This document shows, piece after piece, positions 3,873 through 54,432 of a stretch of DNA of 55,185 nucleotides (positions are counted from its first letter, which is position 1; each line of letters opens with the position of its first letter). The notes beneath the pieces were generated by a model. That model worked only from the letters and a program-made list of their open reading frames with translations, had not been told where the DNA came from and did no database searches. The position numbers were made by a program, and so were the translations under genes. Source of the stretch: Octopus bimaculoides (lineage: Eukaryota); NCBI RefSeq assembly GCF_001194135.2, contig NC_068988.1, positions 38,265,172 to 38,320,356 on the forward strand. Reading direction: 5' to 3'.

Positions 3873-4199
3873 TATGACAAACCCATGAGAAAGAAAGATG
3901 AAGGCCAATAAATAAATAGATAAATAAATAAATTTATAAATAATAACAAAAATAATAATAATCAACTGTTCTATTGGGGATGGCTAGGATTTTAAGATTG
4001 GTGATTGGGTGTTGAGTGTTCTTCCTTGATAAATTAACATCCAGGTACCAAAGCTTACAATTTGCATAAAGAGACCTTGTGAGACCTCTGACAACAGGTT
4101 GCTGTCTGCTCTCACAGTATCGACCAGAGTAAGTAAGCCCGAGAACTCTGAGAAGTAAAGTAATAATGATAATAATAAATACTACTACTAATAAATAAC

Positions 4200-4713
4200 T
4201 CTTTCTACTATAGACACAAGGCCTGGGATTTGAGGGAGGGGGATAGTTGATTACATTGATCCCAGTACTCAACTGGTACTTATTTTATTGACCCTAAAAG
4301 GATGGAAAGTAAAGTTGACCTTAGCGGAATTTGAATTCAGAATGTAGCAGCAGACAAAATACCACTAAGCATTTTGTCCGGCATATTAACAATTCTGTCA
4401 GCTTGCTACCTTAATAATAATAACAACAACAACAACAACAATAATGATGATGATGATGATGATGATAATAATAATAATAATAATAACAACAACAATAATA
4501 ATCCTTTCTACTATAGGCACAAGGCCTGAAATTTTGGAGGAGGGGACTAAATAATTACATCGACCCCAGTGTTTCACTGGTACTTAATTTATCAACCCTG
4601 AAAGGATGAAAACAAAGTCGACCTTAGCGGAATTTGAACTCAGAATGTAGGGGCAGATGAAATACTGCTAAGCATTTCGCTCTGCATGCTAACAATTCTG
4701 CCAGCTTGCCATC

Positions 4714-4808
<95 letters not shown>

Positions 4809-4841
4809 TATTAATAATTAATAATAATAATAATAATAATG

Positions 4842-4882
<41 letters not shown>

Positions 4883-4977
4883 TGATGATAATAGTAATGA
4901 TAATAATAATACTTTATATTATAGGCATAAGGCTTAATGTTTTGGGGGAGGGGTAAGTCAGTTACATCGACCCTAGT
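4200..4977 (-). mobile_element. Head-to-tail array of three SINE B copies (about 4200-4411, 4502-4714, and tail-only 4915-4977) separated by (AAT)n
   Basis: Three reverse-complement copies, each abutting an (ATT)n tail. Confidence 0.85.
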
Positions 4978-11892: not shown

Positions 11893-12545
11893 ACTACTCT
11901 AGGCACAACGCCCAAAATTTTGGGGGAGGGGACCAGTCGATTAGATTGACTCCAGTACGCAACTGGTACTTCATTTATTGACCTCCCCGAAAGGATGAAA
12001 GGCAAAGTCGACCTTGGCAGAATTTGAACTCAGAATGTAAAGACATGAAATACCACTAAGCATTTCACCTGGTGTACTAACATTTCTTATTTCTTTATTG
12101 CCCACAAGGGGCTAAACATAGAGGGGGACAAACAAGGACGGACAAAGGAATTAAGTCGATTACATCGACTCCAGTGCATAAGTGGTACTTTATTTATCGA
12201 CCCCAAAAGGATGAAAGGCAAAGTTGAACTCAGAACGTAACAGCAGACGAAATACCGCTAAGCATTTCACCCGGCGTGCTAACGTTTCTGCCAGCTCACT
12301 GCTTTTGCCTTAACAACTATTAATAACATTAAGGCAATGAGTTAGCAGAATCATTTGCACACCAGGCAAAATGCAATGACATTTCATCTGTCTTTATGTT
12401 CTGAGTTCAAATTCTGTCATGGTCGACTTTGTCTTTCATCTTTTCGGGGTCAGTAAAATAAGTACCAGTTATGTACTGGAATCAATATTATCGACTTACC
12501 CATCCTAAAATTGCTGACCTTGTGCCAAAGTTTGAAATCAATTAT
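11893..12545. mobile_element. SINE B cluster: two minus copies (about 11893-12083, 12084-12303) and one plus copy (about 12330-12545)
   Basis: Head, B-box and central block recognisable in all three; three different tails. Confidence 0.85.
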
Positions 12546-37993: not shown

Positions 37994-38436
37994 ATGCACA
38001 AACATGTAGAATCTTTAGCTAAATTTGAGAAGAAATTCCAGGTATGGAAACAAAACCTGGAATCAAAGGGCCTTAAAGTTAACTTAGCTAAGACAAAAGT
38101 GGTTGTTAGTAAGAAAGAAGATAAAACTCTCTTTCTGTCAGGTAAATGGCCCTGCTCAATATGTAGGAAATGTGTTGGAAGAAATTCCATTCGCTGCACC
38201 AAGTGTAAACTATGGACACATAAGAGGTGCAGTGGAATCACAGGTAGATTAACAGATAAAGTTGTCTTTGTATGTGGCAGATGTGCAGGAACAATAAACA
38301 TTAAGAGCACATGGGACTTAGATTCTCTCAAATGCCCAGGATGCTCTCTTGAGGTTGTAGATAGTTTATTACCTAGGTGACCAAATTAGCAATGGTGGAG
38401 GATGCTCTGAAAGTATTGTTTCTAAAATAAGAAATT
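37994..38436 (+). pseudogene. RTE RT internal fragment with Cys-rich insert
   Basis: LESKGLKVNLAKTKV...KWPCSICRKCVGRNSIRCTKCKLWTHKRCSG...FVCGRC...LEVVDS. Confidence 0.9.
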
Positions 38437-51706: not shown

Positions 51707-52767
51707 CAGCCATGTGATCTCTACATAGTTGTTGGAGCTGCTAGTATATAATTGAAGATGTTAAATATCTAAACTCATTGTTTAAAAAATGAGGTTAATG
51801 TGTGTCCAGTAACAGCATAAATCACTCTGACATATTTTAAGTTTTCTAACTTAATTTCTCAGTACAGTACTCTGGAGATATTTTCACCAACTCTGTACGG
51901 CAAGATATTTTTTCATATTCTATAAACACATTCATGTCATTCTCTTTGTAGATTTTGTTCACTTTATATTCAACCTTTCATAGCTGAGTATTATTAATAG
52001 CAAGATTTCTCAGTGACATATATCTTTCTAGACCAGATGAAGAAGTTACTAAGAGGAACATCTTGTTAACCTGGAAAGTTTACCATAAGATAAATATAAA
52101 CATACTTTCTTTATATGTATATATTGCAATTCTGCACCACCATCAAGTGAGTTATTTGGTGACCTCACTAGTGCTGGTGTCATGGAAAAAAATTGTACTT
52201 GGTACACTCTGTTAAGTAGGTGGTTGGCATTAGAAAGGGTATCCAGCCATAGAAACCTTGTCAAAGCAGATATTGTTGCTGACACAGCCCTCTGGCTAGT
52301 TAGATCTTGTTGACTGGAATATGCAGCCTTGTTTATGCTCCTTAATTAATGATAATGATGATGATGATGATGATGAATTCTTTCCATTTATCTATTTCGG
52401 ATAGTCATAGAGTAGTCTCAAAGAATAAATGCACCAATTAGACAAATTAAAGTATGTCTTGTGACATTCCTATATGTCTAGGTATCTCACACACACACAC
52501 ACATGTATTGTTATGACACTATTAACCTGAAGTTCTAAGACATTTTGGCATAATCCTAGGCATTGGCACGTTGATGGTGCCCTGTTTACAGGTGCAACCA
52601 CGGTTGGGTTTTTTTAAAAAGTTCACTTTGCAATCATTTGTTTTTTTTGTTGTTCAATCTCACTACATGGCACCATGACACCTTAGGCAAATATCTTTAA
52701 CTAGTTCAGCTAACCAATATTTTATGAGTGAATTTGGTATACATACATACATACACGTTTATGTATA

Positions 52768-53186
52768 AATTATTAAGGCGGCTATTTGCAATTTACAACC
52801 GAATAGCAACAAGTATGATTGTTACTAAAGTGACAGGGGGGGGGGTGCTAGTGAGCACCAGCATTGCTAGAAATAAGAGTCAACATAACTCTTAGCCACG
52901 TGAGAGCATTTTCCTAACGACTGACAAGGGAGACAAGCTCCCCACCTACAGCAAGCGAGATTGAGTCATACCAGCACTGATTTCAGATTTGATTAATCTT
53001 CATCAGTGATCCATTACGCCATCGCCGAGGGTTAAAGAACCTAACTCACCCTGTCAACCTTATTGAGAACACCATAGTAAATATTGACTGATTCCGAAAA
53101 TGGTGAAGGGGGAATTATTAATTATTAAGGTGGCTATTCGCAATTTAAAAACGAAAGGCAACAAGTATAGTCATCACTAAAGTGCC

Positions 53187-53187
<1 letters not shown>
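52768..53187 (-). mobile_element. Retrozyme/PLE pLTR-like unit: 68-bp direct repeats (52768-52835, 53120-53187; period 352) enclosing a hammerhead
   Basis: 56 of 68 bases identical by manual alignment; flanked by (ATAC)n and (TCTA)n. Confidence 0.75.
52961..53016 (-). ncRNA. Type I hammerhead ribozyme, canonical core, predicted GUA cleavage between 52969 and 52968
   Basis: TGGATCA-CTGATGA-AGATT-AATCA-AATCT-GAAA-TCA-GTGC-TGG-TA-TGACTCA. Confidence 0.8.
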
Positions 53188-53226
<39 letters not shown>

Positions 53227-53474
53227 GTCTATCTATCTATCTGTACACACACACACACACACACACACACTTATTTAGATGAAGAATGGTGTTAGAAACT
53301 TTGAAGTTTTGACCTTTTAGCCTTAATCAAACTGTGACATGAAGGCTAGCTGGTCAAAACTTCAAAGTCATCATCGTCACTCTTCTTGTAAAAAGTACAA
53401 TAAATATATACTTTACAAAAAAGTATTGAGTAATACCTTAGTTTAACATAAAATTGTTTTTATTATAGCTAGAC

Positions 53475-54432
53475 ATAAGCTCGCAACAAATGAAGCCAGT
53501 ATGCTCCGATGGATGTGTAATGCCAGTGTGCATACTCAACAGAGTGTAAGTACCTTGAGAGAAAAGTTGGACCTAAGAAGCATCAGATGTGGTGTGCAAG
53601 AGTGACGATTGCGCTGGTATGGTCATGTGGCGAGAATGGATGAGGATAGCTGTGTGAAAAAGTGCCACACCCTAGCGGTTGAGGGAACCTGTGGAAAAGG
53701 TAGAGCCAGGAACACCTGGGATGAGGTGGTGAAGCACGACCTTCGAACATTAGGCCCCACCGAGGCAATGACTAGTGACCAAGACCTTTGGAAATATGCT
53801 ATGCGTGAGAAGACCCGGCAAGCCAAGTGAGACCATTATCCGTGGCCTCTGCTAGGGGTGTAGCCAGCCCACTTATGCATACCTTTCCTTCATTGGACAC
53901 TAAATTCTGCTTGTGAAGACCTGTTGAGGCAAGTAAAATCGAAATCAAACTAAATTTGACGACTGGCACCCATGTCAGTGGAGCGCTGACAGTACCATAT
54001 GAGCATGATCATTGCCAGAGCAGCTGTCTGGTTTCTGTGCCAGTGGCACGTAAATAGCACCATTTGAGCGTGATCATTACCAGCGTCGCCTTACTGGCAC
54101 TTGTGCTAGTGGCACGTGAAAAAACATTCAAGCAGGGTCATTACCAGTACCACTGGACTGGCTCCTGTGCAGGTGGCACATAAAAAACACCATTTGAGTA
54201 TAGCCGTTGCCAGTACCGCCTGGCTGGCACTCGTGCCAGTGGCACGTAAAAGCACCCACTACACTCTCGGAGTGGTTGGCGTTAGGAAGGGCATCCAGCT
54301 GTAGAAACTCTGCCAGATCAGATTGGAGACTTGTGCAGCCATCTGGTTTGCCAGTCCTCAGTCAAATCGTCCAACTCATGCTAGTATACAAAGCGGACGT
54401 TAAAAGATGATGATGATGATGATGATGATGAT
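53475..54432 (+). mobile_element. RTE LINE 3' end with about 64-bp tandem units in the 3' UTR and a (GAT)n tail
   Basis: NEASMLRWMC...RWYGHVARM...WDEVVKHDL...EKTRQAK*; tandem gtggcacgtaaaa units. Confidence 0.95.

What the first reader, a model, noticed from the sequence alone, without database searches (positions are those of the whole stretch)
52768..53187. Intact-core hammerhead ribozyme inside a 352-bp direct-repeat unit (retrozyme-like)
Seen on the minus strand: CUGAUGA (53006-53000), a 5-bp stem II AGAUU/AAUCU, GAAA (52984-52981), a 4-bp stem III closed by A15.1-U16.1, a GUA triplet, and a stem I of 3 bp + A.C mismatch + 3 bp. The motif sits between 68-bp direct repeats 352 bp apart, i.e. 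about 1.2 monomers of a tandem unit. Established: metazoan non-LTR retrozymes and PLE pseudo-LTRs are short tandem units carrying type I hammerheads, and retrozymes can yield circular RNAs. Inference: this is a cephalopod retrozyme or PLE pLTR family. The core is intact although the flanking repeats differ at 12 of 68 positions.
Basis: partly seen in the sequence, partly recalled or inferred. Interest (0 to 1): 0.85.

Follow-up and report, generated by a model that had tools for sequence, protein, structure and literature searches.

The report
Lone hammerhead-like motif in short repeat
A 424-bp non-coding insertion (1.2 copies of a 352-bp unit) carries one sequence that fits the hammerhead self-cleaving ribozyme on paper. 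It looks like an old, solitary and probably weak copy of a known kind of small mobile RNA element, but I could not show that it belongs to a family or that it cleaves.

Summary
On the minus strand, 53014-52961 contains CUGAUGA, a 5-bp stem II, GAAA, a 4-bp stem III, a GUA site and a 6-of-7 stem I. It lies between 72-nt direct repeats, 82% identical and 352 bp apart.

The motif is unlikely to be chance within this window: none of 2519 decoy cores matched, and a Markov model expects 7.5e-4 per window. A large genome would still hold dozens of chance matches.

Points for a retrozyme-like origin:
- It has a 352-bp AT-rich unit present as a 1.2-mer.
- Its ends sit on microsatellites.
- It forms a minus-strand-specific RNA hairpin (z -4.6).
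- It shares UCACUGAUGA and GUA|UG with validated mussel and axolotl retrozyme ribozymes.
- A Penelope-type endonuclease fragment lies in the same window.

Points against:
- No Rfam hammerhead model matches, even at E<=10 in 91 nt.
- Positions 10.1/11.1 are A-U rather than G-C.
- The hammerhead fold (-2.3 kcal/mol) loses to a 7-bp competing hairpin (-12.0).
- There is only one ribozyme copy, so this locus cannot release a circle.
- No second copy exists in the window, and no collection I could search holds the source genome.

Verdict: partly supported. It is either a decayed solo retrozyme-like copy (about 0.5) or a chance motif in a structured repeat (about 0.4). It is of modest interest.

The parts
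53116..53187 (-). 5' terminal direct repeat A (72 nt) of the 424-bp block. It starts directly at the (AGAT)n microsatellite.
   Evidence: the repeat finder family D5, 82% identical to 52764-52835 at spacing 352. BLAST E 9e-15.
52836..53115 (-). Unique 280-nt part of the 352-nt unit. It is non-coding, with all open stretches at most 55 aa.
   Evidence: Six-frame translation. No other copy in the window by blastn or nhmmer.
52764..52835 (-). 3' terminal direct repeat A' (72 nt). It ends 9 nt before the (GTAT)4 microsatellite.
   Evidence: The 13 differences from A are 8 transitions and 5 transversions (read).
52961..53014 (-). Type I hammerhead-like motif. It comprises stem I (53013-53007 with 52968-52962), the core CUGAUGA (53006-53000), stem II (52999-52985), GAAA (52984-52981), stem III (52981-52970) and a GUA site with the predicted cut between 52969 and 52968.
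   Evidence: Descriptor match with stem II 5 bp, stem III 4 bp and stem I 6/7. Chance estimates. Top hit in the window of a CM built from three validated retrozyme hammerheads, but only 15.2 bits, E about 0.05, in a shifted register. No Rfam hammerhead hit.
52975..53008 (-). Competing hairpin. CACUGAU pairs with AUCAGUG on top of stem II and sequesters the CUGAU of the core.
   Evidence: This is the MFE structure at -12.0 kcal/mol, against -2.3 for the hammerhead fold.
52915..53060 (-). Imperfect RNA hairpin of about 145 nt with the hammerhead-like motif at its tip. It is much more stable on the minus strand than on the plus strand.
   Evidence: Minus strand -55.4 kcal/mol, z -4.6. Plus strand -31.2, z -1.6. 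The fold has 12 G.U pairs and no A.C mismatch, and an arm-to-arm alignment gives 9 G.U-type against 1 A.C-type difference.
53187..53270 (.). Flanking compound microsatellite, (GT)13(AGAT)14 read on the minus strand, at the 5' boundary of the block.
   Evidence: TRF and sequence.
52739..52755 (.). Flanking microsatellite, (GTAT)4 read on the minus strand, at the 3' boundary of the block.
   Evidence: TRF. Microsatellites cover 12.6% of the window, so both ends lying within 15 nt of one has a chance of about 3%.

Best explanation
The 424-bp block 52764-53187 (minus strand) is one old insertion of 1.2 units of a 352-nt non-coding, highly structured RNA element of the animal non-LTR retrozyme kind. 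These are non-autonomous passengers of Penelope-like elements. This copy carries a single type I hammerhead.

Inferred life cycle, which is not shown here:
1. At a master locus with two or more tandem units, the transcript cuts itself after GUA.
2. The 352-nt monomer is ligated into a circle by a host RNA ligase.
3. A PLE reverse transcriptase copies the circle for more than one turn.
4. The cDNA is inserted at a microsatellite.

This copy has since drifted. Its two terminal repeats are 18% different. It has one ribozyme, so a read-through transcript could be cut at most once and no circle can form here.

The ribozyme is probably weak or dead in this copy, for three reasons:
- Positions 10.1/11.1 are A-U.
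- The helices are AU-rich.
- A 7-bp competing helix forms first and is about 10 kcal/mol more stable.

What is shown: the motif, the 1.2-mer, the flanks and the strand-specific RNA fold. What is inferred: the family, the cleavage, the circle and mobilisation by a PLE.
For: - **Motif.** The catalytic core is complete (CUGAUGA / GAAAU / GUA) with all three helices in type I order. It is improbable by chance in this window.
- **Resemblance to validated ribozymes.** It shares UCACUGAUGA and the A2.1-U1.1 and C2.2-G1.2 closing pairs with the experimentally cleaving mussel Mg353 and axolotl Ax353 retrozyme hammerheads. It shares the GUA site and a non-G-C 10.1/11.1 pair with Ax353 (PMC7229834 Suppl. 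Table 2; section 15). It is the best hit in the window of a CM built from those ribozymes.
- **Unit properties.** The unit is 352 bp with 43% GC. Published ranges are 150-450 bp and below 45-50% GC, and mussel units are 350-390 bp.
- **One insertion.** The two terminal repeats coincide with the ends of the block and abut microsatellites. This is expected for a single insertion of a more-than-unit-length cDNA. PLEs form partial tandems and prefer microsatellites (PMC8557442). Circular RNAs are reverse-transcribed as multimers (PMC7761336). Solo monomers are common offspring (bioRxiv 10.64898/2026.07.22.740005).
- **RNA-level structure.** The hairpin is strand-specific and G.U-rich, and it is on the same strand as the motif. 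The circular unit folds with z -2.4.
- **PLE context.** A canonical PLE endonuclease fragment with a CX4CX2C linker lies at 17038-17514. Its 3' end runs into (AGAT)(GTAT)(GT)n.
Against: - **Rfam.** No hammerhead family matches at gathering score, nor at E<=10 in 701-nt or 91-nt searches. Only weak C/D-box snoRNA look-alikes appear.
- **My own model.** It gives only 15.2 bits, E about 0.05, and prefers a shifted register.
- **Base of stem II.** It is A10.1-U11.1 instead of the usual G-C.
- **Stability.** The hammerhead fold is -2.3 kcal/mol against -12.0 for the competing hairpin, a gap of 9.7. The gaps for coral, mussel and axolotl are 3.6, 7.4 and 2.3.
- **Copy number.** There is a single ribozyme copy and no second copy of the unit in 55 kb. 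No relative was found in any collection I could search.
- **Local background.** Microsatellites and other partial tandems of about 300 bp are common in this window.
- **Genome-wide background.** Dozens of chance matches to the descriptor are expected across a whole genome.
Confidence: 0.5

Rival explanations
1. The hammerhead is a chance look-alike. The region is a structured hairpin inside an unrelated short repeat or a local partial duplication. The tip of that hairpin happens to spell CUGAUGA on one arm, with an internal loop GA/GAA and AUCAG on the other arm. No self-cleavage ever took place.
For: - The motif is the tip of an imperfect palindrome, CACUGAU-GA-AGAUU-loop-AAUCU-GAA-AUCAGUG. 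Stem II and part of stem III therefore come free with the hairpin.
- No Rfam hammerhead hit, and a weak score on my own CM in a shifted register.
- The 10.1/11.1 pair is A-U, and the hammerhead fold is barely stable at -2.3 kcal/mol.
- About 40 chance matches are expected per 2.7 Gb, and the first stage read an unknown number of windows.
- No family was found.
- Partial tandems with a period of about 300 bp also occur elsewhere in the window.
Against: - Within this window the expectation is below 1e-3, including on a decoy-core test that keeps the real sequence and its hairpins.
- The motif also falls inside a 1.2-mer of retrozyme-like size whose ends sit on microsatellites. That adds further factors of roughly 0.03 each.
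- It shares flanking residues with validated retrozyme hammerheads.
- It lies on the strand that carries the RNA-level structure.
Confidence: 0.4
2. It is the remnant pseudo-LTR of an autonomous Penelope-like element whose reading frame has been deleted or lies outside the block, rather than a non-autonomous retrozyme.
For: - PLE pLTRs are partial tandems that carry type I hammerheads and insert at microsatellites (PMC8557442).
- A PLE endonuclease fragment exists in the window.
Against: - No RT or GIY-YIG reading frame lies next to the block.
- The only PLE fragment is 35 kb away and shares no DNA similarity with the unit.
- The PLE hammerheads described in the papers are minimal, with a very short helix III. 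The candidate has 4 bp.
Confidence: 0.05
3. It is a box C/D snoRNA or a retro-copy of one. CUGAUGA would serve as the C box and the CUGA inside AAUCUGAAA as a D or D' box.
For: The only Rfam matches are C/D-box models. The best are snoU2_19 at 26.8 bits (E 0.019 in 91 nt) and snoMe28S-Cm3227 at 20.1 bits. A second UGAUGA lies in repeat A and matches SNORD59 at 19.9 bits.
Against: - All scores are far below gathering (39-45 bits), and the alignments delete about 40 model positions.
- The C box starts with C rather than a purine.
- The only CUGA lies 13 nt after the C box, with no second CUGA downstream and no terminal stem (read).
- The SNORD59-like UGAUGA is absent from the other repeat copy.
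Confidence: 0.02

Closest known systems
Axolotl retrozyme Rtz_353 with hammerhead HHR_Amex2 (PMC7229834)
   Same: - The repeat unit is about 350 bp.
- The hammerhead is type I, with UCACUGAUGA before stem II.
- The base of stem II is not G-C (U.U there, A-U here).
- Helix III is short and capped by a tetraloop.
- The cleavage triplet is GUA followed by UG.
- Activity as a single motif is weak (22% cleavage in 1 h).
   Different: - The axolotl family has about 60,000 copies in tandem arrays and is shown to cleave and to form circles. Here there is one copy with no family or activity data.
- The candidate's stem II is AU-rich.
- Its helix III is longer, at 4 bp.
- Its competing fold is much stronger (gap of 9.7 against 2.3 kcal/mol).
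Mussel (Mytilus galloprovincialis) retrozyme Mg353 (PMC7229834)
   Same: - The host is a mollusc.
- Units are 350-390 bp and AT-rich.
- The hammerhead is type I with UCACUGAUGA and |UG.
- It lacks most canonical loop-loop contact nucleotides.
- Its hammerhead fold is also well above the local MFE (gap of 7.4 kcal/mol).
   Different: - Mussel has G10.1-C11.1, GAAAC and a GUC site.
- It has about 5000 copies in tandem repeats and abundant circRNA.
- No sequence similarity to the candidate exists outside the core.
Pseudo-LTR hammerheads of canonical Penelope-like elements (PMC8557442; Cervera and de la Pena 2014, as cited there)
   Same: - They have a partial tandem organisation.
- They insert at microsatellites.
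- They carry a type I hammerhead.
- A PLE endonuclease fragment is present in the same window.
   Different: - The block has no adjacent PLE reading frame.
- PLE hammerheads are minimal, with almost no helix III.
- No similarity exists between the unit and the PLE fragment in the window.
Schistosoma Sm-alpha SINE-like repeats with hammerhead (from my own knowledge, not checked here)
   Same: It is a dispersed non-coding repeat of about 335 nt in an invertebrate, carrying a type I hammerhead.
   Different: Sm-alpha has tRNA-like pol III boxes and a GC-rich stem II with G10.1-C11.1. No tRNA-like part was detected here.

Membership tests
Hammerhead ribozyme, type I | Invariant core: C3 U4 G5 A6 N7 G8 A9, G12 A13 A14, A15.1-U16.1, and H17 (not G) | tested here: met
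   CUGAUGA at 53006-53000, GAAA at 52984-52981, U at 52970 and A at 52969. It also fits the CUGANGA/GAAAY/RUH rule used in PMC7229834.
Hammerhead ribozyme, type I | Three helices around the core, with helix I open (type I order) | tested here: met
   Stem II is 5 bp. Stem III is 4 bp including a U.G pair. Stem I pairs 6 of 7 positions, with one A.C mismatch and one U.G pair.
Hammerhead ribozyme, type I | Match to a curated covariance model (Rfam hammerhead families) | tested here: not met
   No hammerhead family appears at gathering score, nor at E<=10 in 701 nt or 91 nt. My own CM from three validated retrozyme hammerheads gives 15.2 bits, E about 0.05.
Hammerhead ribozyme, type I | G10.1-C11.1 pair at the base of helix II (usual, not absolute) | tested here: not met
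   The pair is A10.1-U11.1. A validated exception exists: axolotl HHR_Amex2 has U.U and is weakly active.
Hammerhead ribozyme, type I | The catalytic fold is energetically accessible | tested here: inconclusive
   The hammerhead fold is -2.3 kcal/mol against -12.0 for the competing hairpin, a gap of 9.7. The gaps for validated ribozymes are 2.3-7.4. The value is worse than all three controls but on the same scale.
Hammerhead ribozyme, type I | Site-specific self-cleavage after H17 | not testable with these tools
   This needs in vitro transcription or RNA end mapping.
Hammerhead ribozyme, type I | Conservation of the core and covariation of the helices among related copies | not testable with these tools
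   No related copy could be obtained.
Metazoan non-LTR retrozyme | At least two consecutive tandem units, each with a complete hammerhead (the criterion for an active retrozyme in bioRxiv 10.64898/2026.07.22.740005) | tested here: not met
   The block has 1.2 units and one hammerhead. At best it is a solo monomer as defined in that paper. One caveat: a draft assembly can collapse tandem arrays.
Metazoan non-LTR retrozyme | Unit of about 150-450 bp, low GC, non-coding | tested here: met
   The unit is 352 bp with 42.6% GC. No open frame exceeds 55 aa.
Metazoan non-LTR retrozyme | Multi-copy family in the genome | not testable with these tools
   The window holds no second copy, and no search of the outside collections found a relative of the unit.
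Metazoan non-LTR retrozyme | Highly self-paired monomer RNA | tested here: met
   The circular 352-nt unit folds to -93 kcal/mol with 62% of bases paired, z -2.4. The controls give z -3.3 for coral and -0.8 for mussel. The central hairpin has z -4.6 and is strand-specific.
Metazoan non-LTR retrozyme | Expression as a circular RNA of unit length | not testable with these tools
   No RNA data are available.
Metazoan non-LTR retrozyme | Co-occurrence with Penelope-like elements in the genome | tested here: met
   The ORF at 17038-17514 has a C-terminal GIY-YIG domain (Pfam E 1.4e-3, below the curated cut-off) preceded by CX4CX2C. This is one truncated copy only.
PLE pseudo-LTR | Direct repeat flanking, or continuous with, a PLE RT-EN reading frame | tested here: not met
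   No RT or EN frame lies in or beside the block. The nearest PLE fragment is 35 kb away and is not similar to the unit.
Box C/D snoRNA | C box (RUGAUGA) near the 5' end, D box (CUGA) near the 3' end, a terminal stem, and a length of 70-120 nt | tested here: not met
   The best Rfam score is 26.8 bits against a gathering score of 39, with 41 model positions deleted. The only CUGA lies 13 nt after the C box, and there is no terminal stem.

The most novel reading that the evidence does not exclude
Its hammerhead naturally uses an A10.1-U11.1 base pair and an AU-rich helix II, switches between a stable rod and the catalytic fold, and produces circular RNAs mobilised by Neptune-type Penelope elements into (AGAT)/(GTAT) microsatellites. 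This locus would be one solo offspring of that family.
Probability: 0.15. Interest if true: 0.5.

Novelty: new member of a known kind. Interest (0 to 1): 0.3.

Why it matters
If the unit proves to be a family with a conserved core, it would extend hammerhead-bearing retrozymes and their abundant small circular RNAs to a lineage where I found none reported. A full-text search for 'hammerhead ribozyme' with 'octopus' returned nothing specific.

It would also add a natural hammerhead with an A-U pair at positions 10.1/11.1. Because its flanks are intact, it would offer a clean example of a more-than-unit-length insertion at a microsatellite, which bears on how Penelope-like elements mobilise circular templates.

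If it is a chance motif, it is a useful warning. A complete hammerhead core with three helices can arise at the tip of an ordinary hairpin, so family-level evidence is needed before such a site is called a ribozyme.

Tried and rejected
- **Rfam searches.** I searched the whole window at gathering score, and 701-nt and 91-nt stretches at E<=10. No ribozyme family matched. Only sub-threshold C/D snoRNA look-alikes appeared, and I rejected those for lack of a D box and terminal stem.
- **tRNA or SINE head.** ARAGORN found nothing.
- **Family search inside the window.** blastn with word size 9 and nhmmer --max gave nothing beyond the 72-nt repeat and microsatellites.
- **Family search outside the window.**
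  - A protein search with the 55-aa ORF of the unit found nothing.
  - A protein search with the PLE endonuclease ORF found nothing.
  - A protein search with the RT fragment returned only relatives at 77% identity or less.
  - The two contigs I fetched from that list (L001, L002) come from other organisms. Apart from one 72%-identical stretch of the RT gene in L002, they share no DNA with the window.
  - Exact-pattern scans found nothing. I scanned metagenome contigs with two patterns, prokaryotic genome contigs with one and viral contigs with one.
  - Full-text searches of papers for the ribozyme sequence and for the window's repeat sequences found nothing.
  - The source genome is simply not held in these collections.
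- **LTR or TRIM reading.** The terminal repeats start with TG but do not end with CA. No tRNA-primer binding site follows the 5' repeat and no target-site duplication is visible (read).
- **Core intactness as evidence of selection.** I rejected this argument. The expected survival of 13 invariant positions at the observed divergence is about 0.26-0.29.
- **First Markov simulation.** It timed out and was replaced by a conditional simulation.
- **Mis-registered structure string.** One string gave a meaningless +24 kcal/mol for the candidate.

Full report
**1. What is there**

I read the minus strand. The stretch 53014-52961 is AUGGAUCA-CUGAUGA-AGAUU-AAUCA-AAUCU-GAAA-UCA-GUGC-UGG-UA-UGACUCA. A descriptor for type I hammerheads recovers it, and it is the only such site on either strand. 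A relaxed scan also finds no other plausible site.

The features are as follows:
- Stem II is 5 bp.
- Stem III is 4 bp, counting A15.1-U16.1 and one U.G pair, with loop GUGC.
- The triplet is GUA.
- Stem I pairs 6 of 7 positions, with one A.C mismatch and one U.G pair.

The flanking direct repeats are 72 nt rather than 68. They lie at 52764-52835 and 53116-53187, share 82% identity and are spaced 352 bp apart (BLAST E 9e-15). The block is therefore 424 bp, or 1.20 units of 352 bp.

**2. Is it more than chance?**

I conditioned on the 15 CUGAUGA sites in the window. A first-order Markov model then gives 7.5e-4 expected matches per window at the observed stringency.

A second null keeps the real sequence with its hairpins and repeats, and permutes only the two core strings. 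It gave 0 hits for 2519 decoy cores at the observed stringency. It gave 3 of 2519 and 9 of 2519 at two looser settings.

Within this window the motif is therefore not expected by chance. The same rate implies about 40 chance matches in a genome of 2.7 Gb, a size I assumed. I do not know how many windows the first stage read.

**3. What argues against a working hammerhead**

- No Rfam hammerhead family matches. This held at gathering score over the whole window and at E<=10 in 701 nt or 91 nt around the site.
- The only matches are sub-threshold C/D-box snoRNA models. They arise because CUGAUGA...CUGA mimics C and D' boxes.
- The base pair under the core is A10.1-U11.1, not the usual G-C.
- The hammerhead secondary structure is worth only -2.3 kcal/mol. 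An alternative in which CACUGAU pairs with AUCAGUG on top of stem II is worth -12.0. The alternative is simply an extension of the stem II hairpin, so it should also form first during transcription.
- As controls I evaluated three ribozymes shown to cleave in PMC7229834 (sequences from its Supplementary Table 2). Their hammerhead folds are -12.2 (coral), -6.7 (mussel) and -6.6 (axolotl) kcal/mol. They lie 3.6, 7.4 and 2.3 kcal/mol above the local optimum. The candidate's gap is 9.7, worse than all three although on the same scale as mussel.

**4. What argues for a genuine, retrozyme-type hammerhead**

Resemblance to validated ribozymes:
- The validated retrozyme ribozymes read (U)CACUGAUGA before stem II and |UG after the cut. 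The candidate has UCACUGAUGA and GUA|UG.
- Axolotl HHR_Amex2 cleaves after GUA and has a non-G-C pair (U.U) at 10.1/11.1. It is weakly active as a monomer, with 22% cleavage in 1 h. The two oddities of the candidate therefore have a validated precedent.
- I built a covariance model from the coral, mussel and axolotl Ax353 ribozymes. It ranks the candidate first in the window. The score is modest, though, at 15.2 bits and E about 0.05 with rough calibration, and the alignment uses a shifted register for helix III.

Context:
- The unit is 352 bp with 43% GC. Published ranges are 150-450 bp and below 45-50% GC, and mussel units are 350-390 bp.
- The two terminal repeats coincide with the ends of the block. 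The 5' repeat starts directly at (GT)13(AGAT)14. The 3' repeat ends 9 nt before (GTAT)4.
- This is what a single insertion of a more-than-unit-length cDNA should look like.
- The literature describes rolling reverse transcription of retrozyme circles into multimers (PMC7761336).
- It also describes partial tandems and a microsatellite insertion bias for Penelope-like elements (PMC8557442), and frequent solo monomers (bioRxiv 10.64898/2026.07.22.740005).

The support from context is real but limited. Microsatellites cover 12.6% of this window, so both ends lying within 15 nt of one has a chance of about 3%. Other partial tandems of about 300 bp also occur, for example at 4194-4954.

**5. RNA-level structure**

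The motif sits at the tip of an imperfect hairpin of about 145 nt (52915-53060).
- On the minus strand the hairpin folds to -55.4 kcal/mol, z -4.6.
- The plus strand of the same DNA reaches only -31.2 kcal/mol, z -1.6.
- The difference comes from G.U pairs. The fold has 12 of them and no A.C mismatch.
- An arm-to-arm alignment shows 9 G.U-type differences against 1 A.C-type difference.
- Neutral decay of a DNA palindrome should give both kinds equally. The pairing therefore looks selected, or at least biased, at the RNA level on the strand that carries the motif.
- The circular 352-nt unit folds with z -2.4. The controls give -3.3 for coral and -0.8 for mussel.

This fits the highly self-paired retrozyme RNAs. 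It would also fit any retro-copied structured RNA.

**6. Penelope context**

The window holds a 158-aa ORF at 17038-17514. It ends in a GIY-YIG domain (Pfam E 1.4e-3, below the curated cut-off) preceded by a CX4CX2C motif. This is the arrangement of canonical, hammerhead-bearing PLEs of the Neptune type described in PMC8557442.

The fragment is 5'-truncated. Its 3' end runs into (AGAT)2(GTAT)2(GT)n, the same microsatellite types that flank the 424-bp block. It lies 35 kb away and shares no DNA similarity with the unit. It shows only that such elements live in this genome.

**7. The family test could not be done**

- The window holds no second copy.
- Protein searches with an ORF of the unit and with the PLE ORF found nothing.
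- The RT fragment at 23635-23973 found only relatives at 77% identity or less.
- The two contigs I fetched from that list, L001 and L002, come from other organisms and share no repeats with the window.
- Exact-pattern scans found nothing. I scanned metagenome contigs with two patterns, prokaryotic genome contigs with one and viral contigs with one.
- Full-text sequence searches of papers found nothing.

The cephalopod origin is also unverified. The transposon content shows a metazoan. I recall similar SINE sequences from octopus, but that is memory, not a test.

**8. The argument from an intact core**

The two terminal repeats differ at 13 of 72 positions, 8 transitions and 5 transversions. 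That is about 9-10% change per copy since insertion. At that rate all 13 invariant positions survive unchanged with a probability of about 0.26-0.29. The intact core is therefore not evidence of selection at this locus.

The same drift could explain the A.C mismatch in stem I, since one G-to-A transition at 53010 would produce it. It could also explain the wobble pairs. It does not readily explain A10.1-U11.1, which would need two matched transitions.

**9. Mechanism and verdict**

The most likely reading, at about 0.5, is an old solo 1.2-mer copy of a retrozyme-like element. The element would have been made by reverse transcription of a circular or tandem RNA and inserted at a microsatellite. 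With one ribozyme, this locus cannot release a monomer or a circle. The ribozyme in this copy is probably weak or inactive.

The main rival, at about 0.4, is a chance hammerhead look-alike at the tip of a structured hairpin in an unrelated repeat. A pLTR remnant of an autonomous PLE (0.05) and a C/D snoRNA (0.02) are minor.

By the published operational definition, two consecutive units each with a complete hammerhead, the locus is not an active retrozyme. If real, it is a new member of a known kind. Interest is modest.

Noticed in passing
window 17038-17514 (+), with 3' flank to about 17640: This is a 5'-truncated canonical Penelope-like element. A 158-aa ORF ends in a GIY-YIG endonuclease (Pfam E 1.4e-3, below cut-off) preceded by CX4CX2C. 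Its 3' end runs into (AGAT)2(GTAT)2(GT)n. No hammerhead-like motif was found near it.
   Followed up: partly
window 52915-53060 (-): This RNA hairpin of about 145 nt is far more stable on the minus strand (-55.4 kcal/mol, z -4.6) than on the plus strand (-31.2, z -1.6). It has 9-12 G.U pairs against 0-1 A.C mismatches.
   Followed up: yes
window 23635-23973 (-) and 37994-38380 (+): A reverse-transcriptase fragment (RVT_1, E 2.9e-9) and a PHD-finger ORF are present. The RT-plus-PHD arrangement also appears in the foreign contigs L001 and L002 and suggests RTE-like non-LTR elements. The best database relatives are only 77% identical or less.
   Followed up: partly
window 53994-54251, 22306-22536, 40399-40534: A dispersed 66-bp minisatellite family (unit containing GCCAGTGGCACGTAAAA) occurs at three places, in both orientations.
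   Followed up: no
window 51394-51706: A degenerate interstitial array of telomere-like repeats, (CCCTAA/CCTAA)n with periods of 6, 19 and 37, lies 1 kb from the element.
   Followed up: no
window 4194-4954 and 11919-12217: A SINE-like repeat occurs in partial tandems with periods of about 303 and 219 bp. This shows that partial tandems of a few hundred bp are not unique to the finding.
   Followed up: no
window 53274-53392: An inverted repeat with 54-nt arms (74% complementary, 11-nt spacer) lies just beyond the (GT)n/(AGAT)n flank of the element. It may be a small foldback or MITE-like sequence.
   Followed up: no
window 47043-47441 (+): A 132-aa ORF of normal composition has no Pfam match. 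It may be a transposon-derived domain.
   Followed up: no
window 53133-53183 (-): Repeat copy A contains GUGAUGA and gives a weak SNORD59-like match (19.9 bits, E 0.3). The motif is absent from copy A', so it is probably chance.
   Followed up: partly
whole window: This is a draft-quality eukaryotic sequence with 3702 N in many gaps and 37% GC. Microsatellites cover 12.6% of it, in 118 arrays. Tandem arrays may be collapsed in such an assembly.
   Followed up: partly
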